From Prasinococcaceae sp. CCMP 1430 (Eukaryota; Plantae; Prasinodermophyta), in NCBI GenBank assembly GCA_013416795.1, contig RQSC01001105.1, forward strand, positions 14,046-42,688: a stretch of DNA of 28,643 bases, in the 5' to 3' direction. This document shows, in pieces, positions 2,416 through 25,229 of this stretch (positions within the stretch are counted from its first letter, which is position 1; each line of letters starts with the position of its first letter). Made by a program: the position numbers and the translations under genes. The notes beneath the pieces are model-generated. The model did not search any database. It worked only from the letters and a program-made list of their open reading frames with translations, and had not been told where the DNA came from.

Positions 2416-5094
2416 TCATGCCCGCGAGGACGCACCGCCCGAGTCACTCGCGACCGTCTTGAGCTCGCCCATGCTGGCCTCGAGCGCCGCGAGCACCTCG
2501 TTGGCACCGGCCTCTTCATCCTTGGCGCGCGCGACGAGCAGCTTCACGACGTTGCCATGGAAGCCGAGGAGCGCGTCGGTGCGCTCATCACCGAGCTCGG
2601 ACCGCAGGGCCTCGATGGCAACGCCGAGTTTCTTGCCGGGGGCCTGCAGCAGCACGCCCCTGTGCCGCGCGTACAAGAGCTGGACCGCCGTGGCCAGCGC
2701 CGCCGCGGGATCATCCTCGCGCTCGAGCGCTGCGAGCAGCAGCGACTTCTGCGCATGCACCGCCTGCCGCTCCGACTTCTTGTCCATCGCCCTCAGGCCG
2801 AGGCCACACGCCCGGGACGCGGCCTGCAGCGCGTCGAGCAACGCGGCCAGCGACCCATTGCTGGCGTTCAGCGCAGCGACGGCCGCGCCCACATGCTCCG
2901 ACGTGGCCGCGTCCAGGCTTTTGGCGAGCGCCATCGCCATCGCCGCGCGCTCTTTCGGGGAGAGGGCGCCAGCGCCGGCGCGAAGCTCCGAGTGCGCGCC
3001 GTCCTCCGCATGGCCCTGGCCTCCCGACTGAACCGCCTCATCGAGCGTCAGCAGACGCAGGAGGCTGTCGACGGCGTCCGCACCGCACGTGCGCAGCACG
3101 TGCTTGGCGAAGTGGGGGGCCTCTGCCTCGTCTGCCTTGAAGAGCTCCGCCCCGCGTGCGGCGTGCTGCAGCGCCGACCAGCGGCTCCCGACTTCTGCCT
3201 GCAGCGCGGCGCGAGCGCGGCGGCGGCCGTCGGCGCCCGCCGAGAACGCCGACCGAGCGCCCTCGTCGTACGCCTCCCTGGCGGCTTTCACCGACGCCTC
3301 TACCAGCGCCCCTGCGAGCTCCGGCGCGTCGTGCAGGCGGAGCTCCGGCCGCAGCGAGCGCAGACGGGCGAGGAGCGCCGCCGTCGTCAGCGCCTCCGGC
3401 ACCTGTGTGGCCGCCGGCGCCTGCACTCTCGCTGCGGCGCCCTGCGCCTGCTTCTTCCCGCCGGTCGCCCCGCCGCCGCCGCCCCCGCCGGCCTTGCCCT
3501 TCTTCTTGCCCTTGCCCTTCTTGCCAGCCTTGCCGCTCGGCCGCGCATCCCAGTCGTCGTCGGAGCCGGCGTCCCTGGCGGCGCCGGCGGCATGCGGCTT
3601 GGCGCCTGCGCCGGACGCTTCGGGTGTGGCGCCTCCGCCGGCGCTGCCAGCGGCGCCTGCGGCGCCCGCGCCCGCCTGCGCGCGTGTGCCCCGTGCGGCG
3701 GCGCTCTTCAGGCCCTCCTGGCGTGCGTGCTCGACGAGCGCTTCGCGCAGCTCCGCCGCGAGCGCATGAGTGACCACGTACACGCCGGCGTGGGCCGCCC
3801 AGACGTCGGCGTTCCGCGCGGCGAGCGCGCCCACGAGCTGCGCGGCGTCGGCGTCGCCCAGACCCTCGGGCAGGTGCGCGCGCGCGTCCGCCCACCCTGC
3901 CGTGCGCACATCCTCCTCGACACCCGCGTCCAGCCGCGAGAGCACCGCGGCGCCGACGTAGCAGTCGCCGAGCGACACGCCACCCGGGTGGCGCGCGGCC
4001 ATGTACGCCGCGGGGTCCGCCACCTGCAGCGCGCCGAGACGCGAATACTCCATCATGCCGTTGGCCGCGTAGTACGCCTCTGCCGCCTCGCGCTGTGCCA
4101 CGCTGTATACGCGCGGCACCCACGTTGAGCCGCCGCCCTGAGCAACACCTGCCAGGTCCGACACGGCGGCGGAGCCGGCCGAACCAGCCGTGCCTCCTAC
4201 CGTAGCGGCCGCGCTGGCGGCGCTGGCGCCCTGGGCCCTTGCGCGGCTGCCCTTGCCCTTCCCCCCTTTCTTGCTCCCGCCGGCATCCCCCGCTGCGCCG
4301 GACGCGCCGCCCACGCCGCCGCCGGGCGCGCTCGCGGCGGCCGCTGCCATCACCTCGGCGGCGATCGTCCTGAAGAGCACGCCTCCTCCGCCGCCGCTGC
4401 TGCCACCGCCGCCGCGCGCGCCGCCACCGCTGCCACCACCGCCAAAGAGAGCCCCCTCGAGCGTGGCAATGGCGGTTGGCCTGCCCGCAGCGCGCAGCGC
4501 GCCCACCACTTGCGCGCGCAGCGCGGCGACGTGCGTTTCGGTGTAGAGCGCGCCCGCGTCGGCGTCGAGCCGCCCGCGGATGACGCCGCCGAGGTGCGCC
4601 TCCACGACGCGCCGAACGGCGTCTGCCGACAGGTCGAACGCAACCGCGAGGTCCGGCACGGACGCCGCGCCGGATTCGGCGAGCAGCTCGTCGATCTCGG
4701 CGGCCACCGCCGCGTAGTACTCCTCCGTCACCAGGTCTCCATTATACAGCGATACCTCGCCACCCGCGTCCGGGCTCCCCTCGCCCGCGCCGCTGACGAG
4801 CTCGTCGGCGGCGCGCTCGACGTGCGCGAGGTCCACGCCTGCGGCGGCCGCGGCGTCGACGAGCGGCAGCCTCCCGCCGGCGGCCCGCAGCTGTGCGGCC
4901 ACATCGGTACGCAGGCGTGCGCGCGTGAGGTACTCGCGGCCGCTCGCCGTGTGCACCACGGCGTCGCCCAGCAGGCCGCGCGCGCGCAGCAGCTGCACGA
5001 GGTCGACCGCGTTGCGCTCCGACAGCCGCGCCGCCGAACGCGTCTCCTGCGCGGCGCTCAGCGCGCCGAACAGCGACTCGAGCTCCGCATCCAT
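2416..5094 (-). CDS. UFL1: E3 UFM1-protein ligase 1, 892 aa, apparently intronless
   Basis: The N-terminus MDAELESLFGALSAAQ...RLSERNAVDLV...HTASGREYLT is typical of UFL1, as is the acidic/basic loop SDDDW...KKGKGKKK. ATG at 5094, TGA at 2416-2418. Confidence 0.93.
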   Translation of the reverse strand: MDAELESLFGALSAAQETRSAARLSERNAVDLVQLLRARGLLGDAVVHTASGREYLTRARLRTDVAAQLRAAGGRLPLVDAAAAAGVDLAHVERAADELVSGAGEGSPDAGGEVSLYNGDLVTEEYYAAVAAEIDELLAESGAASVPDLAVAFDLSADAVRRVVEAHLGGVIRGRLDADAGALYTETHVAALRAQVVGALRAAGRPTAIATLEGALFGGGGSGGGARGGGGSSGGGGGVLFRTIAAEVMAAAAASAPGGGVGGASGAAGDAGGSKKGGKGKGSRARAQGASAASAAATVGGTAGSAGSAAVSDLAGVAQGGGSTWVPRVYSVAQREAAEAYYAANGMMEYSRLGALQVADPAAYMAARHPGGVSLGDCYVGAAVLSRLDAGVEEDVRTAGWADARAHLPEGLGDADAAQLVGALAARNADVWAAHAGVYVVTHALAAELREALVEHARQEGLKSAAARGTRAQAGAGAAGAAGSAGGGATPEASGAGAKPHAAGAARDAGSDDDWDARPSGKAGKKGKGKKKGKAGGGGGGGATGGKKQAQGAAARVQAPAATQVPEALTTAALLARLRSLRPELRLHDAPELAGALVEASVKAAREAYDEGARSAFSAGADGRRRARAALQAEVGSRWSALQHAARGAELFKADEAEAPHFAKHVLRTCGADAVDSLLRLLTLDEAVQSGGQGHAEDGAHSELRAGAGALSPKERAAMAMALAKSLDAATSEHVGAAVAALNASNGSLAALLDALQAASRACGLGLRAMDKKSERQAVHAQKSLLLAALEREDDPAAALATAVQLLYARHRGVLLQAPGKKLGVAIEALRSELGDERTDALLGFHGNVVKLLVARAKDEEAGANEVLAALEASMGELKTVASDSGGASSRA

Positions 5095-5611
5095 AGCGGC
5101 GGCCGCCGCCGCCGCCCGTCCCCTCCTCTCCCCAACCCCCAATCCACCCTACCCCGTCAGGCGCGTGGGCGCCCGCGCGAGCGCGCTCTGGCACCCCCGC
5201 CCTCGCCATCGACCACGCCGCCGCCGATCTCCCCCTCCTCGACGCCCCGCCCGCCGCCGTCCTCGGCGCTCGCGCGCTCGCTCCTGCGATCTGAACCCTA
5301 TGTAAAATCCTACCCTAAACCCCACGCGGCGTTTGTCGTATCAAAATCAGGGTCAAACGCTCGGCGCGCGGCCGGCCAAAACCCGTCCAAAATCAAAAAT
5401 CATGAGGGCGCGCGAGCGAGCGGCGGGGGCGGGGGTGTTTGCCACACGGCACGCGTGGGGCGGGCGGGCGCCGGGGGTGGGGGTGCAGGCGAGGAGGGGG
5501 CGTGGGCGAAGAGGGGAGGTGGGGGCGTTCGCTGCGGCGCGGACGCGCTCGGTCCCAGCAGCGGTTGCGGTTTCGGCGGTTGCGGTGGCGGCGGCGGCGG
5601 CGGCGCGCGCG

Positions 5612-7863: not shown

Positions 7864-8369
7864 CTAGCGTGCGCAGGAGCCGGTCGGCCGCCTGGGGTGC
7901 GCCTGCGCGAGCGCGAGCGCGAGTACGCGTCGAGCTCCTGGCGGCCAGCCAGGGCGCCCTTCTATAATGCGTGCCGCAGCGCTCTGTGGATGGAGTGCCG
8001 GTGGGTTAGTCCGGATGCGTGGGCACGCGCGCATGCTCCGCGCAAGATCCCGCAAACGGACGTCCATGCGCTTTTCAGCTGGCTTAGTCACTCCTCGCCG
8101 CAGGCGTTCGCAGTCTCCAGAAGCAGCGCCATCTCGGCCGCCGTGAGCCCCCCCCGCAGCGTGCGTCGCGCCGATGACATCAGCAGCGATCGCAGCCGTC
8201 TCAGCACCGCCGGCCGTTGCCACCTGGCACATGATACAGCCAAGGTGAATGACGGAGCAGTCTCTGTGACGGTCCTAATGAAGATATTTTTTATGCACAG
8301 CAATGGGGTGTGAGTGCAGTGCGCGGCCAGCGACGCACGTGCGCCCGCAAAGGTGTCCCTCTAGAGATT

Positions 8370-9162
8370 CTATAGCGTGTGGTCCGCTGGCTCGTTGTAC
8401 GAGTAGCCCCGCCACACCGCGCGGAACTCGCTCCCCATTGAGCTCAACCTGCGAGCGCCGCAGGGTGGCGCCGGCGAGCACACGCGACGTCAGCAGCATG
8501 CGGGCGAAGCGAGAGGGCGCGCATCTAGTCTTGCGGGGAGAGTGTAGCGATGCGCGGGTTGCGAGGCGCACGTACCTCGCCTTGAGGTTGGGCGCGCGCA
8601 GCGAGGCGTGCGCCAGCGAGAAGCCCAGGCCCATGAAGACGGCCCATGCGAGCGTCGTGAGCGCGTCTGTCGCCCAGAGCGCCAGAGCCGACACGAGGCT
8701 CGCCCCGCCCGCCACGAGCGCGCGATCCACCCCGCAGATGCGCACAGGCTGTCCGCGCCGCCGGCTCGCGCCCGGAGCGGCTGGCGGCGCGTTCCCTCCC
8801 CTCGAGCGCATCTTGGCGGCGAGCGGCGGGCTCACTTTCTTCGCGAGGCGCACGAGGCGCTCGGAGAGCGCCGCCGCGAACGTGTCCACGTAGCAGAGCG
8901 CCGCGATCGCCACCAGGCCGAGCGCCACCAGCGCCCACGGATTCCTCCAGAACATGAACGCGAACGCGAACGCAATGACGGCCGCGTAGTTCGTCCTGTA
9001 GTAGTAGAGGTTGCACTTGAGGCGCGCGACGAGCCTCTCCTTGGTCTTGGGCGCGCCGAACCGCCCGCCGAGGAACTCGCGGAACGGCCGCGGGGGCTCG
9101 GACCACTCGACCTCGCGCAGCGAGTCCGCCACCTCGGACCACTCCACCGCCGACCAGTCCAT
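8370..9162 (-). CDS. PRA1: PRA1 family (prenylated Rab acceptor, PRA1.A-like); exons 9162-8576 and 8448-8370
   Basis: MDWSAVEWSEVADSLREVEWSEPPRPFREF...RLKCNLYYYRTNY...AHASLRAPNLKAR|LSSMGSEFRAVWRGYS. The intron 8575-8449 has GTACGT...GCTGAC...CAG. Confidence 0.9.
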
Positions 9163-9301
9163 CGCGCCGCAGCGGCGCGCCCGCCGCCCGCGCCGTCCCC
9201 CCGCACCGCGCCTGGCAGGTAGCGCCGGGGGCTCGACGGCGCGTGCGGGAGGGGAGGGGAGGGGAGGAAAGGGGAGGAAAGGGGAGGGGGCACGGGGCGC
9301 T

Positions 9302-9368
9302 CGCGCCGTGTGGCGCGCGGCAGCAGCAGCCAGCCCCCCCGCGCGCGCGACGCGCGCCACACGGCGCG
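9302..9368. promoter_or_regulatory. 18-bp perfect inverted repeat in the PRA1 / coiled-coil gene divergent promoter
   Basis: CGCGCCGTGTGGCGCGCG (9302-9319) and CGCGCGCCACACGGCGCG (9351-9368), with a 31-nt spacer. The regulatory role is inferred from position. Confidence 0.55.
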
Positions 9369-9458
9369 CGCGGTCGGCGCGCGCGCTCGCGCCCCCCTTC
9401 CCCCTTCTCCCCGTGCGGCGGCGAGGGCGGGTTGGGGAGGGTGTGGGGGAGGGGGCGG

Positions 9459-10757
9459 ATGCCGTGGGGCGGCGCGGACTCGGACTCCGAATCGAGCGCG
9501 GACTGGTCGGACGGCGACGCGAGCGCCGCGGCGAGCGGCTCGGGCGGCGACGGGGAAGTATCGCAGCACGGAGCGAGCAGCGGCGATGAGTCCGATGACG
9601 ACTTCGACGCGCCTGTGCCGCCGCAGCAGCAGCAGCGGCAGCTGGCGGCAGCCATCGTGGCAGAGCCGACAGACGATGCGAGAGCTGCCTCGGAGGAGCC
9701 CGCCATCGCGGCAGCGCACGGCGGTGACGGCGGCGGGCAGCCGCGGGCGTATTCGCAGGCGCAGCCGACGCTGCCCGCGCAGCAGATTGCGCCGCAGCTC
9801 GAGCGACGACAGAGCCTTCCACAACACCGGGGTGGGACAGCTGTATCGGCAGGGTTGACAGCTTCGCAGCCAGCCTCGGGCGCCGTGCGCGCGCTCATCG
9901 ACGCGAACACAGAGCTGCTGCGCGCGCTCATGGGAGACGAGGCTGACGAGGCCCTGGCCTCGCTGCGGACGGAGGGCGGTGAAACAGAAGAGGAGGGGGC
10001 TGGGCTGCCGTCAGGCGCGTCGGTGGCTGTGCAGTATGCGCCCGGAGTGCACGCACCGACGCAGCAGTACGTCGACGTGACGGCGATGGTGGAGGCCATA
10101 CGGGACCTGAAGCGATCGAACGCAAAGCTCGAGGCAGAACTCGAGGATGCGAGGGACGAAATGGCAGGGCTGCGCGCGGGCCCTGTGGCAGCGATGGATG
10201 CCGCGAATGAACGCGCGGCCGCTAAATACAGAGAGAGGGGCGAGGAATTGGCAGCTGTGCGACAAGCCCTGGCCGTGGAAAGGCACTCGAACGACGAGGC
10301 GGAGTCCGATCGCGCTGCCACGGAGGCCGCTCTTCACAGGGAAATCCTGCGGCTGGAGGCGGCGCTCGAGGACGAGAAGGCCGCGGGGGCGACCGCTGAG
10401 GCCGTCGCCCGCGATGCCCTGCCCGAGCTCGAGGCCGAGCGTGCTGTCAGCCGCGAGCTCTACACGACGATCGTCGCGCAGGCCGCAGACGCGCAAACCC
10501 AGCCAGTCGTGCGCGGGCGTGCCCAGCTGGCGTTGCACGCCGCCGCCAGCTCCGCCACGCCGCCAGCTCTAAGCACTGATGGCAAGCTCGCCGCGCTGCG
10601 CGCGATCGAGACCCGCTTGATGGACATTCGGTCGCGGCGTGCCGAGGTGATCCGCGACTTGAAGGTCGAGCACACCGAGATCGTCGCCACGGAGGAGCGC
10701 GAGGAGAAGCGGCTCTTGCGCAAGCGCGCCGTTCTAATGGAAGCTGCTGCAGGCTAG
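9459..10757 (+). CDS. Hypothetical protein with acidic/disordered N-half and coiled-coil C-half, 432 aa
   Basis: Long ORF with protein-like composition and heptad-rich segments (IRDLKRSNAKLEAELEDARDEMAGL; LRAIETRLMDIRSRR). TGTAA at 10796-10800 downstream. No family recognised. Confidence 0.75.
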   Translation: MPWGGADSDSESSADWSDGDASAAASGSGGDGEVSQHGASSGDESDDDFDAPVPPQQQQRQLAAAIVAEPTDDARAASEEPAIAAAHGGDGGGQPRAYSQAQPTLPAQQIAPQLERRQSLPQHRGGTAVSAGLTASQPASGAVRALIDANTELLRALMGDEADEALASLRTEGGETEEEGAGLPSGASVAVQYAPGVHAPTQQYVDVTAMVEAIRDLKRSNAKLEAELEDARDEMAGLRAGPVAAMDAANERAAAKYRERGEELAAVRQALAVERHSNDEAESDRAATEAALHREILRLEAALEDEKAAGATAEAVARDALPELEAERAVSRELYTTIVAQAADAQTQPVVRGRAQLALHAAASSATPPALSTDGKLAALRAIETRLMDIRSRRAEVIRDLKVEHTEIVATEEREEKRLLRKRAVLMEAAAG

Positions 10758-10944: not shown

Positions 10945-11718
10945 CTAGGGCTCGCTGTCGATCGTGTCGTCCGGAAGCTGCAAGCGCGAGTACAGCACGT
11001 AGATGGTCGCGAAGCACGAGAGCATTGCGATCGCCGCGACCGTCTTAAAGCCCGACGAGCGCGATTTTGTGCGCTTCTTGCGAAGTGCTCCGCCGCCGCC
11101 TGGCTTGGTGTCGCCAACGGTGAGCGGCAGCGACCTGGCCGCGCCACCCACGCCGGCCTTTCGCATCGCGCGCACGTGCCACGGCGTGCGCTTCGAGTAC
11201 TTGTCGGCGGCGCCGTCGCTCGCGTTGCCGCCACCGGTTGCGGCATCAGCCTCGGCGATTGCCGCCGCTGCCGCCGCGTGTGTCGACGCGTGCGAGTTTC
11301 CTGAGCGCTGCTTCTGTACCGAGGGCGGCGAGAGCGCCGCGCTCGCCATGGCCCCGAACGGCGCGGCGTCCCCTCCGCCACCAGCGCCCGAGCCGTTCGC
11401 AGTGTGCGTCTGTGCTGCCCTGCGCGGAGGGGTTGCAGTCGGCGCGGCGGGCGCGACCCCGGGCGCGCTCACCCCGCCGGGGACCTCTATAACGAGCTCG
11501 TCGATCTCGCCGAGCTGCTCGATCGACGTCACCTCAGTGAGCGTCTTCGCCTGATAGACGGCGCCGACCGCGCTCACGCGCAGCTTGCGCGCGGCTGTTG
11601 CGCGGAAGTCGGCCCACGTGACGCCCGGGGCGAGTGGCACCACGGCCTTGCGCAGCGGCCGGCCCGACGGGAGCGTGGGCCCGTCCTTGACCGACACGAA
11701 CACCAGCTGCTGGGGCAT
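10945..11718 (-). CDS. Hypothetical tail-anchored membrane protein with a small N-terminal globular (possibly beta-grasp) domain, 257 aa
   Basis: An N-terminal domain of about 80 aa, an Ala/Pro linker, a polybasic stretch LRKKRTKSR, a single hydrophobic helix VAAIAMLSCFATIYVLY and a short tail. Confidence 0.75.
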   Translation of the reverse strand: MPQQLVFVSVKDGPTLPSGRPLRKAVVPLAPGVTWADFRATAARKLRVSAVGAVYQAKTLTEVTSIEQLGEIDELVIEVPGGVSAPGVAPAAPTATPPRRAAQTHTANGSGAGGGGDAAPFGAMASAALSPPSVQKQRSGNSHASTHAAAAAAIAEADAATGGGNASDGAADKYSKRTPWHVRAMRKAGVGGAARSLPLTVGDTKPGGGGALRKKRTKSRSSGFKTVAAIAMLSCFATIYVLYSRLQLPDDTIDSEP

Positions 11719-11802
11719 CGCGCTGCTTGGCCCCGGCTGCGCGCCTCGGCCCGGCGACCCCTCCGTCGCGCGCCGCCGCGCGCGCAGGAGGCGGGCGCTG
11801 CC

Positions 11803-11803
11803 N
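11803..11803. other. Single-N scaffold gap
   Basis: n in the sequence, between two divergent genes. Confidence 0.9.
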
Positions 11804-11806
11804 CCG

Positions 11807-12922
11807 ATGTCTAGATCTACGGTGTCGCAGTCTACCGATGGGCCCGCAACGGACGCTCAAGCAGCAGCGCAAAAGGCACAGCCAACACCGGTAGCGGACG
11901 TGGGCTCTGTGCAAGCACTGGCGTCCAGGACGCACGGCCCCACCGACGCACAGCGCTCACGCTCTTCTGCGTCGGTGCCAGGCTCCCCCACGCAGTCCCC
12001 GATGGGCACTGTCACGTCAGCCATGTCGGCGAGTGTTCCGAGCATGGATGCACAGATGTCTTCGCTGTCTCTATCGACTCCGTCGCTGCCACCTTCTCGC
12101 GACAGCAGCGGCGCGCAGCAGGGGCCGCCATCACATCCCGCGGTGAAGGGAGTGGGCCTCGATGGACAGGCTAAAACCGCGCCCGCGCAGAGCACACGGG
12201 GAGAGGCAGCTCCGAGGGGCTTGACAATTGCAATGTCCACGGCGCCGGCAACGCCTCCACCGCCACAGCGGCCACAGGGCAGCGCGCACCCGCACGTTTC
12301 TCCGGTACCACAAATGCCCCCCCCAACCGCGCAACCTCCGCTGCCTCCTCCTGGCCTTGCGCTCCTCCTCCGACAGCAGGGACCGATGACGACGCCCGGC
12401 GAGCCTGGCGCAAGGAAGGGAAGCGAGAGCCTCTTCGGCTCGACGGTCGAGTCCCCCACTCTCTCTCCCGGGGGGGCGATATCGAAGGGCCGGCTCAAGC
12501 AACTCCTGGACGCGTCCTTCCAAAGCAAGCCTCGCCCCGAGGATCGTGAGGGCGTCTCTCCAGGCCTCGAAAACCTGGACGCGTTTGCGACGCGCGGGTC
12601 ACAGCCGACGCCCGCCGTCGACGATCTCCCTGCGATCGGCTTCGGACGGCGCTTTCCAGCAGCACCGCAGCATGCACACGTTCTCACCTCGTACCCATGG
12701 ACAGAACAGCAGCGTACGCCTGGGCACGCCAGCGCCGCAGCCGAGCTCTTTTACGTTGTGGACAATGAGCAATTGCTTTTTGCGTTCCACTTTCAACAAG
12801 GTGGATACCTCCAGCTCGCAGCAGCGAAGGAACTTTGCCGCCGCGGATGGCGCTTCGACATGAAACAGCGCGCGTGGTTCACGCGAGCACAGGAGCCCCA
12901 GGAGGTCAATAGTGCCTACTGC
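11807..12922 (+). CDS. NOT2/NOT3/NOT5-box protein (NOT3-like, divergent); 3' exons unresolved, 5' end next to a gap
   Basis: LKQLLDASFQSKPRPEDRE...SYP...LFYVVDNEQLLFAFHFQQGGYLQLAAAKELCRRGWRFDMKQRAWFTRAQEP aligns with the NOT3 NOT-box. A probable donor GTGCGC follows at 12923. Confidence 0.75.
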
Positions 12923-13376
12923 GTGCGCGGAGGCGCGCAGGCGTGCGCAAGGTGCGCGGCTGGGTGGGCGGGCAGGTGGGCGGGTGGGTCGTGGGCGTCG
13001 TCCGCCGCGTGCGTGGCGGGCTCTGGTCACGCGCCACCGTTTCATCTTTTCTCTTCGTTGCGCTGGCCACAGCTCGGATTTGAGGTTCGGGCTCAAGAAT
13101 GCCCTCGCTCTGTCTGCGCCCTTTTTTCTCGCGCGCACCCGTCGCTCGTCGCGGCCGGATCGGCGCCTCTGCCGGTCGGGCGCGGCGCGCCACCAACCCG
13201 GCGCGTTCCGTCCCGGCCCGGGCGGGGGCGTCCCCGCGACTCTGACCTTTTCGGCGCCTTGCTCACTCAATTCCCGCTTTTTGGAACAGTAGTGCCGTAT
13301 CACATGCAAACGCCCTCCGGGTCGGAATTCCACGTCCGCACTCGGGAGTGAGCTTGCGCGAACCTCGGTAGTATAA

Positions 13377-13526: not shown

Positions 13527-14031
13527 ACCTCTCCGATCGGTTGCGCGCGCGGCGCGGCGCCGAGGCGCCGAGGCGCGTTGGCGCGCGCGTTCGTTTGGGA
13601 GGTGCCCCACATGGTATCATGCTACTGTACCGCCATCAGGACCAGGCCGGGGATGGATGGGTGGATGTTGGGATATATGGGCGGCGCTCGGCGCACCCAC
13701 CCGTCAGAACGAACGAAACGAATTTGGGCCCGGCGGAGGGGCATCTCGGCGGTTTCGAATGGCATTTCGCGCCGTTTGGGCTCGCCATCAAAACGCAAAC
13801 GATTGTTGGGGGGATAAAATACGAAAGGGGGAAAAAGATGCCCGCGCGCCGCCACAGCGCGCACAGCGGCGGGTGCGCGGCGCGCGCGGGTGCGCGCACG
13901 CGGGGGGTACCGTGTGGACGTGTACGCGGCTGTTCGTTCGGCGGGCCGGGCGGCGGGACACGGCGGCGCGGCGGCGCTGAGGAGGCAGTGTGGCGAGGAT
14001 CCGCGCGGCGGCGCCGAACGGGGAACGTAGA

Positions 14032-16059
14032 ATGGGCGCCCGCGCCCCCCACGCGGCGGCCACCGCCGCCGCGGCCGGGAGCGAGGCTGGGGGCGCTGAG
14101 GCCGCGCCGGCCGCGCTGCTGTCGCCTCGGCCGAAGACGCAGCCGGAGCCCATGGGGACGGCGGATGCGTTAGGCTGCGGCGTCTTCGAGCGCGTCGCGA
14201 TGGAGTTCCGGCCGTACCATAGCAACTCTGTGAATGCTGCGCTGCACCTGGTCACGACGCCGCTCGCGCTGGCTGGCGCCGCGGCGGCCGCGGGTGTTGG
14301 CGTTGCGCGTTTGATGGGCAGCGCAGACGACGGCAGCGTGGCGGCCGTGGCCGCGGCGGGCGTTTGCGCGGCCTACGCCGCCAGTCTGCTGCCTTACCTG
14401 TCGTTGCTGCTGTGGTGCGCGTCGACGGTGGTGTGCGCTGCCACAGGCGGGCTTGCAGTGCTCTTCGTGCGCGAGTGCGGCCTGTATGGGGCGCTGGCTG
14501 CCTTCGCCGCGGGGTACGTGCTACAGGACCTGGCGCACTTCGCCACAGGGGAGCGCACGTACCAGAGCGCATACCAAGGCCGCACGGGCTGGCTCGTCAC
14601 GCTCGCTGCTCACACGTTCTTTCTGGTCCCGCTCGTGCTCGACGCGCTCTGCCATACGGAGGACAGCATCCTCGCGTGGCCCGTGCCGCACGACCACGTC
14701 ATGTACGCGCGCCTCGACGGCGCAGAGGAAGTCGCTCACCGCGCCACGCTACGCGAGTGGGTGATCGAGCAGAAGCCTTCGGCGAAGCACACCACGCACT
14801 GGTGGTACGAGCGTCTGCCGGAGGCCGCAAAAGCGAGCTTCCACGCGCTCGCGATGAGCGGCAGCATGCTCGGGATGTTCCGCGCGCGCTTTCCCGGCAA
14901 TGCCTATACCGTCGAGCCAGTCTTTGGGATGAATGAAATCTACGTGGCATCGGACCAGAACCTCGGACAAACCTCGGACAACGTGTTTTACATGCTGCAC
15001 ACGGACGGCCCCTGGGGCGTCTTCCCCATGTGCGGGCTCTACCGGTGCATCCTGGCAATCTCGCCCAACGAGCAGGTGGCGACACGATTCCCCTTTTCCT
15101 CAAAAGAGTTCGTGCTCACCGATGGCGACGTCGCGGCATTCGATTTCAATCGCGAGATCCATGACATCAAGAACGTACCTGGCCGCTGTAACGAAGGCCA
15201 GCGGATCACGCTCAAGGTACACTACGTGGTCTACCCAACGGTGCTGAGGCCATACGGCAAGCTGCTCAAGGCTCTGACGACCACCTACAACACGTTGGCG
15301 CGCCTGACCTTCCTCAACACGATCCAGCCGCGCGGCCTGTGGAGGCTCGCTGCTTGGCTCGTGCTGAAGATCACCTCGGTGCGCTTCCGCACCGAGATGC
15401 ACGCGGGCTGGACGAACGTGTCGTACGTGGCCGCGTGCGCCCTCGCCGCGCATTGGCTCGGGGACTACCGCCTGCTCGTGGCGATGACCTCGTTCGTACA
15501 CTATTTCATGTACATTGGCACATACCATGCGGCGCTGCTGGGGCTGCGGGTGAGCTTTGGCCATTTCAAACGGGACGTGGTCTTCTACAAGGCGGTCGCG
15601 TACGCTCACATCTGCAACATTCTCGTGCGAAACTTGGACGTCGCGCGCGCCCATGCGTCGCTGCCGGTGGCCGCGGCGATGGTGTGCATCGGCTACGGCC
15701 TAGCAGCGGCGGCCTCTGTGGCGCTTGGGCTCGATCAGACGTACTTCGGCGCCGAGCTAGGGGAGTGCAAGCCACGCTTCGTTACGGCCTTTCCCTACGG
15801 TAGATTTGGGGTACCCCATCCGATGATACTGGGCGCCATCACCGGTCTCGTCGGATTGCAGCTCACCGGCGCGTTTGTGGGCGTGCCGTGGCTCATACCG
15901 ACCCACATCGGCCTGTACCTCTTGCACATGCTGCAGGAGCAGGCGTGCGACATGTACAGCGCCGACGCCGCCATTAAGGCCTTTGGCCACGCGCGAAGGC
16001 ACAGTGCCGGCTACCTCCCGGCCGTCGCGCGCGCGCACGACGAGGGCATCACCGCCTGA
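14032..16059 (+). CDS. Multi-domain membrane enzyme: Mpo1/DUF962-like + putative Fe(II) dioxygenase (HxD...H) + PEMT-like methyltransferase; start may instead be 14152
   Basis: One uninterrupted ORF. FRPYHSNSVNAALHLVTTP...YVLQDLAHFATGE is Mpo1-like. FYMLHTDGP...LTDGDVAAFDFNREIH...RITLKVHY is double-stranded beta-helix (DSBH)-like. ALGLDQTYFGAELG...FVTAFPY...PHPMILGAI is PEMT/OPI3-like. Confidence 0.85.
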   Translation: MGARAPHAAATAAAAGSEAGGAEAAPAALLSPRPKTQPEPMGTADALGCGVFERVAMEFRPYHSNSVNAALHLVTTPLALAGAAAAAGVGVARLMGSADDGSVAAVAAAGVCAAYAASLLPYLSLLLWCASTVVCAATGGLAVLFVRECGLYGALAAFAAGYVLQDLAHFATGERTYQSAYQGRTGWLVTLAAHTFFLVPLVLDALCHTEDSILAWPVPHDHVMYARLDGAEEVAHRATLREWVIEQKPSAKHTTHWWYERLPEAAKASFHALAMSGSMLGMFRARFPGNAYTVEPVFGMNEIYVASDQNLGQTSDNVFYMLHTDGPWGVFPMCGLYRCILAISPNEQVATRFPFSSKEFVLTDGDVAAFDFNREIHDIKNVPGRCNEGQRITLKVHYVVYPTVLRPYGKLLKALTTTYNTLARLTFLNTIQPRGLWRLAAWLVLKITSVRFRTEMHAGWTNVSYVAACALAAHWLGDYRLLVAMTSFVHYFMYIGTYHAALLGLRVSFGHFKRDVVFYKAVAYAHICNILVRNLDVARAHASLPVAAAMVCIGYGLAAAASVALGLDQTYFGAELGECKPRFVTAFPYGRFGVPHPMILGAITGLVGLQLTGAFVGVPWLIPTHIGLYLLHMLQEQACDMYSADAAIKAFGHARRHSAGYLPAVARAHDEGITA

Positions 16060-16266
16060 GAGACTGCGCCGAGCTGCGCGTGGCGCTACGGGCGCACCGC
16101 TCACCTCGAGGTAACACAACATTTCGCCTCGCTGGCGCCGGACGTCGAATGGTTCGAGCCCCTTTAGATTCCCGTGGGTAGTATTGATATATAATTATAA
16201 TGTCATATCATCTGGAGTGAATGTGAGCCGCGAGTTCCCCTCGCTCGCTCGCTGCGCTGGCGCTGC

Positions 16267-17217
16267 GTGCCACTGCGCGCGCGGGGCGCGCAGGCACCGC
16301 TGGGCGCAGGGCCTGCGGGGAGGCGGCGATGGCCGCGGCGAGGGTCCATCGCGCGGCGAGGGGGCGGCCCGCTCCAACGCGAGGCTCGAGGGAGGGACTG
16401 CTGGGGGGTCGGGAGCGGCGGGAGCGGCGGGAGCAGCGATTCCGGCGACGGGGGCGAGCGCGAGCTCTCGCCTGAGGAGTGGGATCGTGCGCTTGCGGAG
16501 GCGTCGATGCTGCTGGCGCAGGCAACGCGCATGGCAGAGGCGCAGACGCGCGCGGAGCTGGGCGTGGCGTTCGCTCTCGACGCGTCCGATGCGGCGGCGG
16601 GCGCTGGCGGCCGCATGCCCCCTTCCGACTCGGGCGACGAGGGGGACGCTGCCGTGTCGTCGGTGGCAGAGCGCGTGGCGGGTCTTGCGCGCTTTCTGTG
16701 CGAGGGCATGGGCGCGAGCGACGCCCTATCCGCCGAGCGTCTCGCCGCATCGCTCGTGCGCGCCGGCTCGCCATACGCCCATCCGGAGATGCTTGAGCAG
16801 AAGGTGAGACGCCTGCAGAACACCTTGGCTCTGGACAGCCTGGACGTGATGTCCCTCGTCCTGGCCGATGCCCAGGTGCTCCACGTCGACGCAGGCAGCG
16901 CAGTTCGCCGTCTCCTTGAGATGCTTGCAGTGTGGCCCGCAGGCCGCGCGGCGTGCGCCCTCTCCAACTGCCCGCGGCTGCTGTACGTGGAGGACTTCTC
17001 TGAACGCTACGCGGGGACGCAGGACGCACTCGTGGGGCTCATGGGCGTTTCGGAGGCGGACGCGGCCTTCTGTCTCTCAGAAGAACCGGGCCTGCTCTGG
17101 ACGCTCCTCGTGCACACCGACCCGATCCTCTCCTGGCGTGCGAGAGACATCGCGGAACTGCCCATGTCAGTACAGAACGACATCAGTTTCGGGCTGCGGA
17201 GTAAATACGCGTTGTAG
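16267..17217 (+). CDS. Probable organelle-targeted helical-repeat protein (weakly mTERF-like); true start not found
   Basis: Arg/Gly/Ala-rich N-terminus, then repeats such as ALSNCPRLLYV and CLSEEPGLLWT. The frame is open from 16201, but the first in-frame ATG is at 16507. Confidence 0.6.
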   Translation: MPLRARGAQAPLGAGPAGRRRWPRRGSIARRGGGPLQREARGRDCWGVGSGGSGGSSDSGDGGERELSPEEWDRALAEASMLLAQATRMAEAQTRAELGVAFALDASDAAAGAGGRMPPSDSGDEGDAAVSSVAERVAGLARFLCEGMGASDALSAERLAASLVRAGSPYAHPEMLEQKVRRLQNTLALDSLDVMSLVLADAQVLHVDAGSAVRRLLEMLAVWPAGRAACALSNCPRLLYVEDFSERYAGTQDALVGLMGVSEADAAFCLSEEPGLLWTLLVHTDPILSWRARDIAELPMSVQNDISFGLRSKYAL

Positions 17218-23752: not shown

Positions 23753-25229
23753 ATGAGATCGCAGAGCGCCCGGGCGCGCCACGCGCGCGCGCGCGATCCG
23801 AAACGTGTGGCGCGCGCGGGGAGGCGGTGGCAGAGCGCGCAGCCCGCGGCAGCGCAGGGGTGGGGCGGTGTGTGTGGGGGGACGCGCACGCGGCCGTCGC
23901 GCGGCGCACGCTCGGCGCCGGAGCGCTCGAGGTCCCGGAGGTCTGCCTCGGCACCATGACGTGGGGCGAGCAAAACACCGAGACGGAGGCGCACGCGCAG
24001 CTCGACTACGCCGTCAGCGAGAAAGGAATCAATTTCATAGACACAGCGGAGCTCTATCCGGTGAGCTCGCCGCTGCGAGCGCGCGAGGGCCCACGTGCCG
24101 CCGCAGACTGAGCCGCTTGCAACACGCCCGCTGGCAGCTCGCTCGCTGACCCTCCCCGCGCCGCGTCTGCGCACACGCGGGCAGGTGCCGGCCAAGGAGG
24201 AGACGCAAGGGCGCACTGACAGGTACATTGGCTCGTGGCTGAGGGGTGTCAAGCGCGAGGATGTCACAATCGCAACGAAGGTCTGCGGGTACTCGGATCG
24301 CCTGCGGTGGTTCCGCGAGGCGGAGGGCCAGCCGACGCGCGTCTCCGCCGCACAGATCGCCGAGAGCGTCGACCGCAGCCTAGCACGGCTGGGTACGGAC
24401 TACATTGACTTGCTGCAACTCCACTGGCCCGACCGATACGTGCCACTGTTCGGCGCGGGCGCATACGACGCCAAGGAGCACAGGCAGGACACCGTGCCAA
24501 TCGAGGAGCAGCTGGAGGCGCTGGCGCGGCTGCGCGACGCGGGCAAAGTGAAGTTCGTCGGGCTCTCCAACGAAACGAGTTTCGGGGTGATGCGATTTGT
24601 CGGTGCCGCCGAGGCGTCGCAGAATGCCTCGCTGCCGCGCGTCGTCAGCATACAAAACGCATACTCGCTCAACGTGCGGGGCGCTTTCGAGACCGATCTC
24701 GTGGAGACCTGCGCGCCGCACAACTGCAACGTGAGCCTGCTTGCGTATTCCCCGCTCGCTGGGGGCACCCTCACGGGCAAGTACCTGGAAGACGAGTCGG
24801 ATCCTCGCGCGAGAATGAACGCGTACACGAACTACATGAATCGATACCGCAACCAAAGGGCGCGCGAGGCGACCGCGGCGTACGTGGCGCTCGCTCGAGC
24901 ACATGGGCTCACTCCCACACAGGTGCGGCGCGCCGATCGCGTCGACTGTTTGCGCGTGGAGTCCGCACGGCGGCGCTCGTTGGCGTGCACGCCCTGCTGG
25001 TCCTCGTGCGAGTGCACCTCGCTGACGCGCGCTGGTGCACCGCGTGCTTTTGCAGCTCGCTCTGGGCTTCTGCCGCTCGCGCCCGTTCATGGGCTCAACC
25101 ATCGTCGGGGCAACCTCGTTGGAACAGCTCAAGGAGAACATTGAAACCTTCGAAATGGAAGCGCTGACTCCGGACGTGCTCGAGGCCATCGATGAGATCT
25201 ACAGCGAGTATCGCGATCCCGCCAATTGA
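23753..25229 (+). CDS. Aldo-keto reductase (Tas-like); exons ?-24060, 24185-24922, 25056-25229; start uncertain (nearest ATG at 23753 is out of frame)
   Basis: VPEVCLGTMTWGE...NFIDTAELYP|VP...IATKV...LLQLHWPDR...GLSNET...SIQNAYSL...YSPLAGGTLTGKY...TQ|LALGF...IVGATSLEQLKENI. Catalytic D/Y/K/H are present. Confidence 0.92.

What the first reader, a model, noticed from the sequence alone, without database searches (positions are those of the whole stretch)
14032..16059. Three-enzyme fusion: Mpo1-like dioxygenase + HxD...H dioxygenase-like domain + PEMT-like methyltransferase
Seen: one intronless ORF with three modules. (a) About 14200-14650: His motifs YHSNSVNAALH and QDLAH...E around hydrophobic helices. 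(b) About 14700-15240: a soluble domain with H-T-D (14998-15006), a distal His (15160) and R-I-T-L. (c) About 15450-15940: membrane helices with TYFGAELG and AFPY...PHPM. Established: yeast Mpo1 is an Fe(II) dioxygenase that shortens 2-hydroxy fatty acids; PEMT/OPI3-family enzymes are SAM-dependent membrane lipid methyltransferases; HxD...H is the facial triad of Fe(II)/2-oxoglutarate oxygenases. Inference: a channelled lipid-tailoring enzyme for an unassigned pathway. Candidates are sphingolipid or hydroxy-fatty-acid remodelling, or betaine-lipid head-group chemistry such as the DGTS-to-DGTA conversion, for which I know of no identified enzyme. I know of no characterised protein with this architecture.
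Basis: partly seen in the sequence, partly recalled or inferred. Interest (0 to 1): 0.85.

Follow-up and report, generated by a model that had tools for sequence, protein, structure and literature searches.

The report
Candidate DGTA betaine-lipid synthase, three-domain
This green-alga gene encodes a conserved three-part membrane enzyme (two iron oxygenase modules plus a methyltransferase) that in bacteria sits beside the genes for the phosphorus-free lipid DGTS and in one eukaryote is fused to them. That makes it the best available candidate for the long-unidentified enzyme that converts DGTS into DGTA.

Summary

Domains:
- The N-terminal part gives recurrent but sub-threshold Mpo1-like matches.
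- The middle part folds with high confidence as a prolyl-hydroxylase-type 2-oxoglutarate/Fe(II) oxygenase, with an invariant H-x-D...H triad.
- The C-terminal part is PEMT-like in 63 of 65 homologues.

The whole architecture is kept across hundreds of proteins in green algae, ochrophytes, a haptophyte, diplonemids, chytrids and several bacterial phyla. In several eukaryotes it is encoded on a single transcript.

New here: in 23 of 34 bacterial loci the gene lies directly beside btaA-btaB, the DGTS synthesis genes, usually in the order phosphoesterase-btaA-btaB-X. One eukaryotic transcript-like contig fuses it in frame to a BtaA+BtaB (BTA1-type) module. The enzyme therefore very probably acts on DGTS or its precursor.

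DGTS-to-DGTA conversion loses one carboxyl and gains another, and its enzyme is reported as unknown. It is the most likely reaction (about 0.5). No paper in the searchable library describes this family. Function is inferred, not shown. The main gap is whether confirmed DGTA producers such as diatoms carry it. The scan had not noted this family on other DNA.

The parts
14032..16059 (+). Whole coding sequence (675 aa from the first ATG; the ORF opens at GTG 13990; stop at 16057-16059)
   Evidence: ORF list. Full-length homologues. AF2 model of the whole protein: pLDDT 88.5, pTM 0.86.
14032..14184 (+). Ala/Arg/Pro-rich N-terminal extension. It is not conserved and is modelled with low confidence. 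It may be a targeting peptide or may lie upstream of the true start (other ATGs at 14152 and 14200).
   Evidence: Alignment starts to be conserved near residue 66. pLDDT is under 50 for model residues 1-33.
14185..14649 (+). N-terminal helical membrane domain, Mpo1-like (DUF962-like), with invariant His77, His86, His183, Glu188, His208 (numbering from 13990)
   Evidence: Pfam PF06127 at 20.6 bits, cut-off 24. 17 of 65 homologues match, best E 2.6e-5. One homologue is named YGL010W-like by JGI. Invariant columns.
14215..14247 (+). H-x8-H motif (YHSNSVNAALH) in the first conserved helix
14524..14553 (+). QDLAH...E motif (invariant Gln179, His183, Glu188)
14650..15243 (+). Soluble double-stranded beta-helix domain, prolyl-hydroxylase-type 2OG/Fe(II) oxygenase fold
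   Evidence: Domain model pLDDT 93.7. VIA-align against 48,161 chains: top 50 all 2OG oxygenases, Z 12.9 to 5c5t and 2y33. Foldseek: 188 hits at E<=1e-3. Whole model Z 12.8.
14998..15006 (+). H-T-D: first His and Asp of the metal triad (His337, Asp339), invariant in 65 sequences
15160..15162 (+). Distal His391 of the triad, invariant, at the start of a beta strand
15202..15216 (+). R-I-T-L-K at the start of the last long strand. Arg405 and Lys409 are nearly invariant and are candidate binders of the 2OG C5 carboxylate. This is inferred from strand register, not from a superposition.
15244..15993 (+). C-terminal polytopic membrane domain, PEMT/ICMT-like methyltransferase. It includes extra helices with invariant His504 and Arg528.
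   Evidence: Helices in the model. Pfam PEMT in 63 of 65 homologues. Invariant columns.
15667..15882 (+). Stretch matched by Pfam PF04191 (PEMT) in this protein (residues 560-631)
   Evidence: 18.2 bits, below the cut-off of 25 here; above it in several relatives:
15739..15825 (+). TYFGAELG ... AFPY ... PHPM block. Thr584, Tyr585, Phe586, Glu589, Gly591, Phe601-Tyr603 and His610-Ile613 are invariant in the 17 closest homologues; of these only Glu589, Pro602, Pro611 and Met612 stay strictly invariant in 65 sequences.
15925..15942 (+). HMLQEQ near the C-terminus. His646, Gln649 and Glu650 are invariant in the 17 closest homologues; Glu650 stays invariant in 65.

Best explanation
The gene encodes a trifunctional integral-membrane enzyme of betaine-lipid metabolism. 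It acts after BtaA/BtaB (BTA1) on the head group of DGTS and most likely converts it to its isomer DGTA, that is, it is a 'DGTA synthase'.

Proposed working, all inferred:
- The lipid stays in the bilayer and its head group is handed between three active sites held in one rigid protein.
- The Mpo1-like iron domain removes the original carboxyl carbon as CO2, by analogy with Mpo1's one-step oxidative decarboxylation of 2-hydroxy acids.
- The cytosol-facing 2OG/Fe(II) oxygenase domain activates or oxidises a C-H bond of the head group.
- The PEMT-like domain delivers one carbon from S-adenosylmethionine, either to nitrogen or to a carbon that ends up as the new carboxyl.

Shown here: the domain folds, the conserved metal and cofactor motifs, and the genomic coupling to DGTS synthesis. 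Not shown: substrate, product, and the order and chemistry of the steps.
For: Coupling to DGTS synthesis:
1. Gene neighbourhood. 34 bacterial loci encode a full-length relative. In 23 of them btaA (Pfam DUF3419, E to 1e-121) and btaB lie directly beside it, typically as metallophosphoesterase-btaA-btaB-X with X starting 30-240 nt after btaB. The lineages include Pirellulales, Phycisphaera, Myxococcota, a Prochloraceae cyanobacterium, Shewanella surugensis and other MAGs. Both co-directional and convergent arrangements occur.
2. Gene fusion. A 3953-nt contig with AT-rich flanks carries one 1231-aa ORF: X (residues 15-582) followed by DUF3419 and a methyltransferase, a BTA1-type module.

The protein itself:
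3. The bacterial btaAB-linked proteins are 38-50% identical to one another. They keep residues equivalent to the algal protein's His77/His86/His183/Glu188/His208, His337/Asp339/His391/Arg405/Lys409, His504, the HPM of the PHPM block and the C-terminal Gln-Glu.
4. The middle domain has a 2OG oxygenase fold. PEMT matches 63 of 65 homologues; Mpo1-like matches are recurrent.
5. The whole-protein model is compact (pTM 0.86).

Fit to the known reaction and its distribution:
6. DGTA is reported to arise from DGTS by 'decarboxylation/recarboxylation', with enzyme and mechanism unknown (PMC10685587). The three modules offer decarboxylation, oxidation and one-carbon supply.
7. Carriers include Ochromonas, the genus where DGTS-to-DGTA conversion was traced, and a brown alga, a DGTA-containing group. 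Other carriers are Tribonema, Chrysochromulina, Tetraselmis and Pterosperma. O. tauri, a green prasinophyte, has BTA1 and is reported to contain only DGTA, so a converting enzyme must exist in that lineage.
8. Lead only, not checked: another note of this scan reports a stand-alone BtaB in the same genome.
Against: - No biochemical or genetic data exist for any member.
- The betaine-lipid chemotype of Prasinoderma, the chytrids, the diplonemids and all the bacteria carrying the gene is unknown to me. I found no report of DGTA in a cultured bacterium.
- No diatom, Pavlova or Ectocarpus protein appeared by name in the capped hit lists.
- The green-lineage chemotype is disputed. One study assigns Mamiellales DGTS by phylogeny.
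- About a third of the bacterial loci lack btaAB nearby. Three sit next to a PUFA synthase cluster instead.
- PEMT/ICMT-type enzymes are known to me as N- and O-methyltransferases, not C-methyltransferases, so the role of the third module in an isomerisation is not obvious.
- The Mpo1-like assignment is below Pfam's threshold.
Confidence: 0.5

Rival explanations
1. The enzyme works in the betaine-lipid pathway but makes something other than DGTA. Possibilities are a hydroxylated, carboxyl-methylated or chain-shortened DGTS derivative, a still undescribed betaine lipid (especially in the bacteria), or a step toward DGCC.
For: The btaAB neighbourhood and the BTA1 fusion show coupling to DGTS synthesis, not the product. 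ICMT/PEMT-type domains are known to me as carboxyl-O- and N-methyltransferases. One relative matches Pfam ICMT and one is named Ste14-like. I found no report of DGTA in cultured bacteria. The chemotypes of most carriers are unknown.
Against: DGTA is the only DGTS-derived lipid for which precursor-product tracer evidence is cited. Carriers include classic DGTA groups such as Ochromonas and a brown alga. DGCC-rich but DGTA-poor groups were not conspicuous among named hits. Two oxygenase modules plus a methyltransferase are more than a simple methyl ester or hydroxyl would need.
Confidence: 0.3
2. The enzyme is a general lipid-tailoring enzyme unrelated to the betaine head group. Examples: alpha-oxidation of 2-hydroxy or other acyl chains (2OG hydroxylase plus Mpo1-like decarboxylase) combined with PE/PC-type N-methylation, or remodelling of polyunsaturated acyl chains. 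Its linkage to btaAB would then reflect only co-regulation under phosphate stress.
For: Mpo1 is a 2-hydroxy fatty acid dioxygenase (PMC10398889). A 2OG hydroxylase followed by Mpo1-type cleavage would make a complete alpha-oxidation unit (my inference). Three bacterial members lie next to pfa-type PUFA synthase genes. One operon also holds a CarF-like lipid desaturase and a quinone-reductase-like dehydrogenase. UniRef names a member phosphatidyl-N-methylethanolamine N-methyltransferase by automatic transfer.
Against: An in-frame fusion to BtaA+BtaB and tight positioning 30-240 nt after btaB in many lineages argue for a shared substrate, not mere co-regulation. The three modules are never seen apart from one another in the main family, which suggests one multi-step reaction on one substrate.
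Confidence: 0.12
3. The enzyme is the missing algal step of DMSP synthesis: oxidative decarboxylation of the 2-hydroxy acid DMSHB to DMSP by the Mpo1-like module, with the methyltransferase acting on MTHB.
For: Mpo1 chemistry (2-hydroxy acid to the acid one carbon shorter plus CO2) is formally the DMSHB-to-DMSP reaction. The algal decarboxylase is reported as unidentified (PMC11306096). Several carriers are marine algae that make DMSP.
Against: The substrates are small and soluble, whereas this is a polytopic membrane protein with a lipid-type methyltransferase. Chlorophytes already have DSYE for the methylation step. The bacterial context is btaAB, not sulfur metabolism. Carriers include freshwater or soil chytrids and Tribonema.
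Confidence: 0.03
4. The single ORF is an annotation or assembly artefact, or the modules are separate or degenerate genes.
For: The public 970-aa gene model for this locus differs from the plain ORF. High G+C DNA yields many spurious long ORFs.
Against: The architecture is collinear in over 100 cluster representatives and on complete transcripts of several eukaryotes. The predicted catalytic residues are invariant. The whole-protein model is confident. A second assembly carries the same ORF.
Confidence: 0.02

Closest known systems
BTA1 / BtaA-BtaB (DGTS synthase)
   Same: Same pathway by genomic association. It is adjacent in 23 of 34 bacterial loci and fused in one eukaryote. Both are SAM-using enzymes of betaine-lipid head-group chemistry and, in algae, multi-domain fusions.
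   Different: There is no sequence or fold relationship. BtaA is DUF3419 and BtaB a class I methyltransferase. X has two iron-oxygenase modules and a membrane-embedded PEMT-type methyltransferase. X would act after DGTS is made.
Yeast Mpo1 (YGL010W; Pfam PF06127, DUF962), Fe(II)-dependent 2-hydroxy fatty acid dioxygenase
   Same: The N-terminal module is a small helical membrane domain with conserved His residues and gives recurrent weak matches to PF06127. The expected chemistry, loss of C1 as CO2, fits the tracer-defined loss of the DGTS carboxyl.
   Different: Matches are below Pfam's gathering score and cover only about positions 4-65 of the 95-position profile. Here the module is fused to two other enzymes. 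The presumed substrate is a head-group carboxylate next to a quaternary ammonium, not a 2-hydroxy fatty acid.
Prolyl-4-hydroxylase / PHD2-type 2OG/Fe(II) oxygenases (vCPH 5c5t, PHD2 2y33)
   Same: Double-stranded beta-helix fold (Z 12.9, about 160 aligned residues, rmsd 3.7). H-x-D...H triad with a basic residue on the following strand.
   Different: Only 10-14% sequence identity and no Pfam or PDB sequence match. The domain is inserted between two membrane domains. The substrate is presumably a lipid head group, not a protein. From memory, not tested: the 2OG oxygenases that handle trimethylammonium substrates (BBOX, TMLH) may be the closer functional analogues.
PEMT / Opi3 and ICMT (Ste14) membrane methyltransferases (Pfam PF04191, PF04140)
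   Same: Polytopic membrane domain matching PF04191 in 63 of 65 relatives. It has an (R/P)HPM-type motif and a C-terminal acidic motif.
   Different: The match covers only the last 70-90 residues of a domain of about 250 residues with extra helices. It is never free-standing in this family. The methyl acceptor is unknown.
Two-enzyme fatty acid alpha-oxidation (2-hydroxylase followed by Mpo1 or HACL)
   Same: A hydroxylase-type module plus a C1-removing module in one pathway.
   Different: Here both are in one polypeptide with a methyltransferase and are tied to betaine-lipid genes rather than to sphingolipid metabolism.

Membership tests
2OG/Fe(II)-dependent oxygenase superfamily (P4H/PHD-like) | Double-stranded beta-helix (jelly-roll) core fold | tested here: met
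   Domain model pLDDT 93.7. An unbiased VIA-align search of 48,161 chains returned only 2OG oxygenases in the top 50, Z 12.9-9.9. Foldseek gave 188 hits at E<=1e-3.
2OG/Fe(II)-dependent oxygenase superfamily (P4H/PHD-like) | H-x-D/E...H metal-binding facial triad | tested here: met
   His337, Asp339 and His391 are invariant in 65 sequences, with 54-residue spacing. The distal His lies at the start of the penultimate strand.
2OG/Fe(II)-dependent oxygenase superfamily (P4H/PHD-like) | Basic residue on the last core strand that binds the 2OG C5 carboxylate | tested here: inconclusive
   Arg405 and Lys409 are nearly invariant at the start of the last strand. Equivalence to PHD2 Arg383 or the P4H Lys is judged from strand register only.
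2OG/Fe(II)-dependent oxygenase superfamily (P4H/PHD-like) | Dependence on Fe(II), 2OG and O2 | not testable with these tools
   Needs an enzyme assay.
Mpo1-like (Pfam PF06127 / DUF962) | Significant match to the family profile | tested here: inconclusive
   20.6 bits against a cut-off of 24 in this protein. 17 of 65 relatives match at E<=0.01, best 2.6e-5, and none was seen above the cut-off. JGI names one relative YGL010W-like.
Mpo1-like (Pfam PF06127 / DUF962) | Conserved His residues in membrane helices for Fe(II) binding | tested here: inconclusive
   His77, His86, His183, Glu188 and His208 are invariant. I could not align them to the experimentally defined Mpo1 residues, because the paper on them is not held and no Mpo1 sequence or structure was available from a tool.
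PEMT/ICMT membrane methyltransferases (Pfam PF04191) | Match to the family profile | tested here: met
   63 of 65 relatives match, best E 6e-10. Several are above the 25-bit cut-off. This protein itself scores 18.2 bits.
PEMT/ICMT membrane methyltransferases (Pfam PF04191) | SAM binding and methyl transfer | not testable with these tools
   The conserved PHPM...G and Q-E motifs resemble, from memory, the RHPxY and EE motifs of the family.
Betaine-lipid (DGTS) pathway accessory enzyme, a 'DGTA synthase' (no described family) | Genomic coupling to btaA/btaB or BTA1 | tested here: met
   23 of 34 bacterial loci are adjacent. In-frame fusion in L001.
Betaine-lipid (DGTS) pathway accessory enzyme, a 'DGTA synthase' (no described family) | Present in DGTA producers and absent from DGTS-only organisms | tested here: inconclusive
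   Present in Ochromonas, a brown alga, Tribonema, Chrysochromulina and prasinophytes. No Chlamydomonas, Nannochloropsis or land-plant names appeared in the hit lists, but no diatom, Pavlova or Ectocarpus names either. The lists are capped, so absence is not established.
Betaine-lipid (DGTS) pathway accessory enzyme, a 'DGTA synthase' (no described family) | Converts DGTS to DGTA | not testable with these tools
   Needs expression or knock-out with isomer-resolving lipid analysis.

The most novel reading that the evidence does not exclude
This family is the long-sought DGTA synthase. One polypeptide performs the whole 'decarboxylation/recarboxylation' of the DGTS head group. The new carboxyl (or the new N-CH2 carbon) comes from oxidised or SAM-derived carbon rather than from CO2 fixation. 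Planctomycetes, Myxococcota, some cyanobacteria and Shewanella surugensis, not only eukaryotic algae, would then make DGTA under phosphate stress. That would change how DGTA is read as a biomarker in the ocean.
Probability: 0.45. Interest if true: 0.9.

Novelty: new variant of a known kind. Interest (0 to 1): 0.82.

Why it matters
Betaine lipids replace phospholipids in much of the ocean's phytoplankton when phosphate is scarce. DGTA is a major extraplastidial lipid and a polyunsaturated fatty acid platform in diatoms, brown algae and other groups. Since the 1992 tracer work the DGTS-to-DGTA step has had no enzyme and no mechanism. A 2023 paper still states this (PMC10685587), and I found no later paper assigning it.

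The result here is a concrete, cloneable candidate with conserved predicted catalytic residues. It comes with compact bacterial operons (phosphoesterase-btaA-btaB-X) in cultured strains: Stieleria bergensis, S. mannarensis, S. tagensis, Rhodopirellula baltica BR-MGV and Shewanella surugensis DSM 17177. This makes the question directly testable.

If confirmed, it would:
- give a gene marker that separates DGTS makers from DGTA makers in metagenomes;
- allow engineering of DGTA in heterologous hosts;
- reveal an unusual three-site enzyme combining two different iron oxygenase types with a membrane methyltransferase;
- show bacterial sources of DGTA.

Tried and rejected
Searches that gave nothing useful:
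- Profile searches of the whole family and of the middle domain against PDB sequences gave nothing meaningful. Only fold comparison identified the middle domain.
- NCBIfam has no model for the protein.
- Pfam has no match for the middle domain.
- The search for related loci with the 65-sequence alignment failed for lack of a conserved stretch. It worked with seven bacterial sequences.
- Papers on Mpo1 catalytic residues and the 2025 betaine-lipid review are not held.

Ideas and checks that did not hold up:
- DMSP idea (Mpo1-type DMSHB decarboxylase): considered because the algal decarboxylase is unknown. Set aside because of the membrane/lipid nature of the protein and the btaAB context.
- Looked for BTA1 in the window and next to the chytrid homologue. 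None was found: the window's neighbours are UFL1, PRA1, a CNOT2/3-like gene and an aldo-keto reductase.
- Tried to use the near-identical contig L045 as transcript evidence. It is collinear genomic-type sequence with an upstream indel and says nothing about splicing. Transcript support therefore comes from relatives.
- The public 970-aa gene model joins residues 1-657 to a downstream ORF through a predicted intron. I rejected it as the likely product because all homologues end 10-40 residues after the Q-E motif, as the plain ORF does, and the added part has no family match.

Limits:
- I could not name the organism of the fusion transcript (SRR21705866) or of the abundant marine clusters P0008/P0009. 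They branch with green-algal sequences and may be Mamiellales, but this is unverified.
- Several explicit atom-by-atom routes from DGTS to DGTA were considered: carboxyl 1,2-shift, Stevens-type shift, C-methylation followed by oxidation, and alpha-oxidation followed by aminomethylation. None could be favoured from sequence, so none is asserted.
Full report
**1. What is in the sequence**

Window 13990-16059 (+) is a single open reading frame of 689 codons. The first ATG is at 14032, giving 675 aa, and an in-frame stop lies just upstream of 13990. The region is 63-69% G+C and full of overlapping spurious ORFs. This one is real:
- An exact-sequence look-up places it in Prasinoderma coloniale, as EukProt EP00793, PRCOL_00006224.
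- A 98.5% identical copy exists in an independent assembly.
- It has full-length homologues at E down to 1e-146. There are 683 cluster representatives at E<=1e-3 and 156 at E<=1e-30.

**2. Domain anatomy**

An AlphaFold2 model built on 65 homologues is confident and compact (mean pLDDT 88.5, pTM 0.86). Only the first ~33 and last ~23 residues are disordered. In numbering from 13990 the protein has three parts.

(a) Residues ~66-220: a helical membrane domain.
- Invariant residues are His77, His86, His183, Glu188 and His208.
- It gives a weak Pfam Mpo1-like match (20.6 bits, cut-off 24).
- The match recurs in 17 of 65 relatives, best E 2.6e-5. JGI names one relative 'YGL010W', the systematic name of MPO1.
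- I rate this assignment probable but not proven.

(b) Residues 221-418: a soluble domain with no Pfam or PDB sequence match.
- Folded alone it reaches pLDDT 93.7.
- An unbiased structural search of 48,161 PDB chains returns only 2OG/Fe(II) oxygenases in the top 50. The best are the viral collagen prolyl hydroxylase 5c5t and PHD2 2y33, at Z 12.9 with ~160 aligned residues.
- Foldseek gives 188 hits at E<=1e-3 with the same families on top. The whole-protein model gives the same answer.
- His337-x-Asp339 and His391 are invariant. His391 opens the penultimate strand, and the nearly invariant Arg405/Lys409 open the last strand. This is the canonical layout.

(c) Residues ~419-668: a polytopic membrane domain.
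- Its last part matches Pfam PEMT in 63 of 65 relatives, best E 6e-10.
- Several relatives score above the gathering cut-off.
- It has conserved TYFG.ELG, FPY, PHPMI.G and Q-E motifs.

**3. Is it one gene?**

Complete single transcripts encode the whole architecture in:
- Pterosperma (MMETSP1438);
- Tetraselmis (MMETSP0419);
- Tribonema gayanum;
- the diplonemids Flectonema and Rhynchopus.

An Ochromonas transcriptome entry (MMETSP1177) matches over 99% of a full-length query.

The public 970-aa model for the Prasinoderma locus splices residues 1-657 onto a downstream ORF at 16276-17214. All homologues end shortly after the Q-E motif, as the plain ORF does, and the appended part matches no family. 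I take the 675-aa product as the likely one. RNA-seq of this alga would settle it.

**4. The decisive context**

Pfam scans of long or odd relatives showed that P0118 (1231 aa) is this three-module protein (residues 15-582) followed by DUF3419 and a class I methyltransferase. [quoted passage not shown] Its contig is 3953 nt with one uninterrupted ORF, short AT-rich flanks and upstream in-frame stops. It looks like an mRNA.

Bacterial homologues then showed the same link:
- An uncultured bacterium: dehydrogenase-X-btaA-btaB-CarF-like desaturase.
- A Myxococcales MAG: X next to convergent btaB-btaA.
- Stieleria and Rhodopirellula: metallophosphoesterase-btaA-btaB-X, with 6-38 nt between btaB and X.

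To quantify this I scanned one genome per bacterial species and found 34 loci. I searched their six-frame ORFs with HMMs built from the btaA, btaB and neighbouring genes seen above.
- 23 of 34 loci carry btaA and btaB directly beside X.
- Two of the remaining eleven contigs are too short to tell.
- One further locus is a degraded remnant.
- One locus, plus two metagenomic relatives, lies next to a pfa-type polyunsaturated fatty acid synthase instead.

The btaAB-linked loci come from Pirellulales, Phycisphaera, Myxococcota, a Prochloraceae cyanobacterium, Shewanella surugensis and several other MAGs. Gene orders differ between them, so the linkage is maintained, not merely inherited. The DUF3419 matches are full length, at E 1e-98 to 1e-121. 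The upstream phosphoesterase is LpxH-like. From memory, that is the family of the phosphate-starvation phospholipase PlcP. This is inferred, not tested.

**5. Relationship between the algal and bacterial proteins**

A maximum-likelihood tree of 33 sequences separates a bacterial, btaAB-linked clade (support 100/99) from a mostly eukaryotic clade.
- The Prasinoderma protein groups with other green-lineage sequences (Pterosperma, P0002, P0008/P0009).
- The fusion protein falls near Ochromonas and the brown alga, on a long branch.
- The pfa-linked bacterial proteins nest among eukaryotic ones next to Tribonema and a chytrid. This suggests horizontal transfer.

The seven bacterial proteins aligned are 38-50% identical to one another and keep residues equivalent to the algal protein's predicted catalytic residues in all three modules. 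Transferring the functional inference to the algal gene is therefore reasonable.

**6. What it most likely does**

The neighbourhood and the fusion place the enzyme after BtaA/BtaB, acting on DGTS or its unmethylated precursor. I put this at about 0.8.

The only DGTS-derived lipid with tracer support is DGTA. [quoted passage not shown]

The three modules supply the kinds of chemistry such a conversion needs:
- removal of C1 as CO2, the Mpo1-type reaction;
- C-H activation or oxidation by the 2OG oxygenase;
- one carbon from SAM, from the PEMT-like module.

How these combine is unknown. I considered several atom mappings and cannot choose between them. Isotope tracing in a reconstituted system would decide.

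Named carriers include Ochromonas (the genus of the original tracer work), a brown alga, Tribonema, Chrysochromulina, Tetraselmis and Pterosperma. O. tauri has BTA1 yet is reported to hold only DGTA.

I give 'DGTA synthase' about 0.5. Another DGTS-derived product gets about 0.3. A lipid function not centred on the betaine head group gets about 0.12. Small remainders go to the DMSP idea and to artefact.

**7. Weak points**

- No member has been studied experimentally.
- Chemotypes of most carriers are unknown, including Prasinoderma, the chytrids, the diplonemids and all the bacteria.
- The capped hit lists named no diatom, Pavlova or Ectocarpus protein, so the crucial presence/absence test is open.
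- The green-lineage DGTS/DGTA assignment is itself disputed.
- A third of the bacterial loci lack btaAB nearby.
- The Mpo1-like call is sub-threshold.

**8. Novelty**

Searches of the held literature for a DGTA synthase, for btaA/btaB together with DGTA, and for the decarboxylation/recarboxylation step found no enzyme assignment. Statements up to late 2023 say it is unknown. Public names for members are 'hypothetical protein', 'methyltransferase' or an automatic PEMT label.

Each module belongs to a known superfamily. The combination and the proposed role have not been described.

One other note of this scan reports a stand-alone BtaB elsewhere in the same genome. I did not check it. If true, it means the alga has the upstream pathway.

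Noticed in passing
window 16003-17214 (+): The public gene model PRCOL_00006224 (970 aa) joins residues 1-657 of this protein to a downstream ORF (16276-17214) through a predicted intron. This skips the natural stop at 16057. The appended 313 aa match no Pfam family, and homologues lack such a tail. It is probably an over-merged model of two genes.
   Followed up: partly
L007 1-7711; L022 1-9611; contig of P0016: Three bacterial members, which nest inside the eukaryote-like clade, lie divergently next to a pfa-type polyunsaturated fatty acid synthase cluster (PfaA-like, PfaD/NMO, PPTase) instead of btaAB. This may link to the PUFA-rich nature of DGTA, or may mark a horizontally transferred lipid island.
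   Followed up: partly
L002 8729-14228: One bacterial operon reads quinone-reductase-like dehydrogenase, X, btaA, btaB, CarF-like plasmanylethanolamine desaturase (145.8 bits, below the cut-off of 500), with overlapping stop and start codons. This suggests a larger betaine or ether-lipid module.
   Followed up: no
L044 8472-10951 (Stieleria sedimenti): The locus looks degraded. X matches only from residue 260 on, only a btaB fragment is present, and no btaA was detected. It may be a pseudogenised cassette or an assembly problem.
   Followed up: no
proteins P0121, P0134, P0138, P0140, P0141, P0144, P0154 (350-485 aa): A shorter subfamily aligns to query residues ~165-510 at about 30% identity. 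That covers the end of the Mpo1-like domain, the oxygenase domain and, in the longer members, the first helices of the C-terminal domain. None matches Pfam PEMT. Origin and context are unknown.
   Followed up: no
L006 7245-9056 (Hormoscilla sp. GUM202): In this cyanobacterium the homologue is only 351 aa (C-terminal half), preceded by a separate 195-aa ORF. It may be a split or frameshifted gene. There is no btaAB nearby.
   Followed up: no
window 13908-13925 versus L045 156-325: A second Prasinoderma-like assembly (98.5% identical) has about 170 nt where the window has 16 nt, just upstream of the ORF. This is an indel in the presumed promoter or 5' UTR.
   Followed up: no
window 2416-5142 (-), 8275-9822 (-), 11585-13351 (+), 24095-25144 (+), 26960-28543 (-): Neighbouring ORFs match UFL1 (UFM1 E3 ligase), the PRA1 family, the NOT2/3/5 C-terminal domain, an aldo-keto reductase and, weakly, ALMT/FUSC-type transporters. 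None relates to lipid head-group synthesis, so the alga has no gene cluster here.
   Followed up: partly
proteins P0238 / P0250 (Convolutriloba macropyga record): A homologue is annotated in the genome of an acoel flatworm that hosts green-algal symbionts. It may be symbiont-derived sequence, or a transfer into the animal.
   Followed up: no
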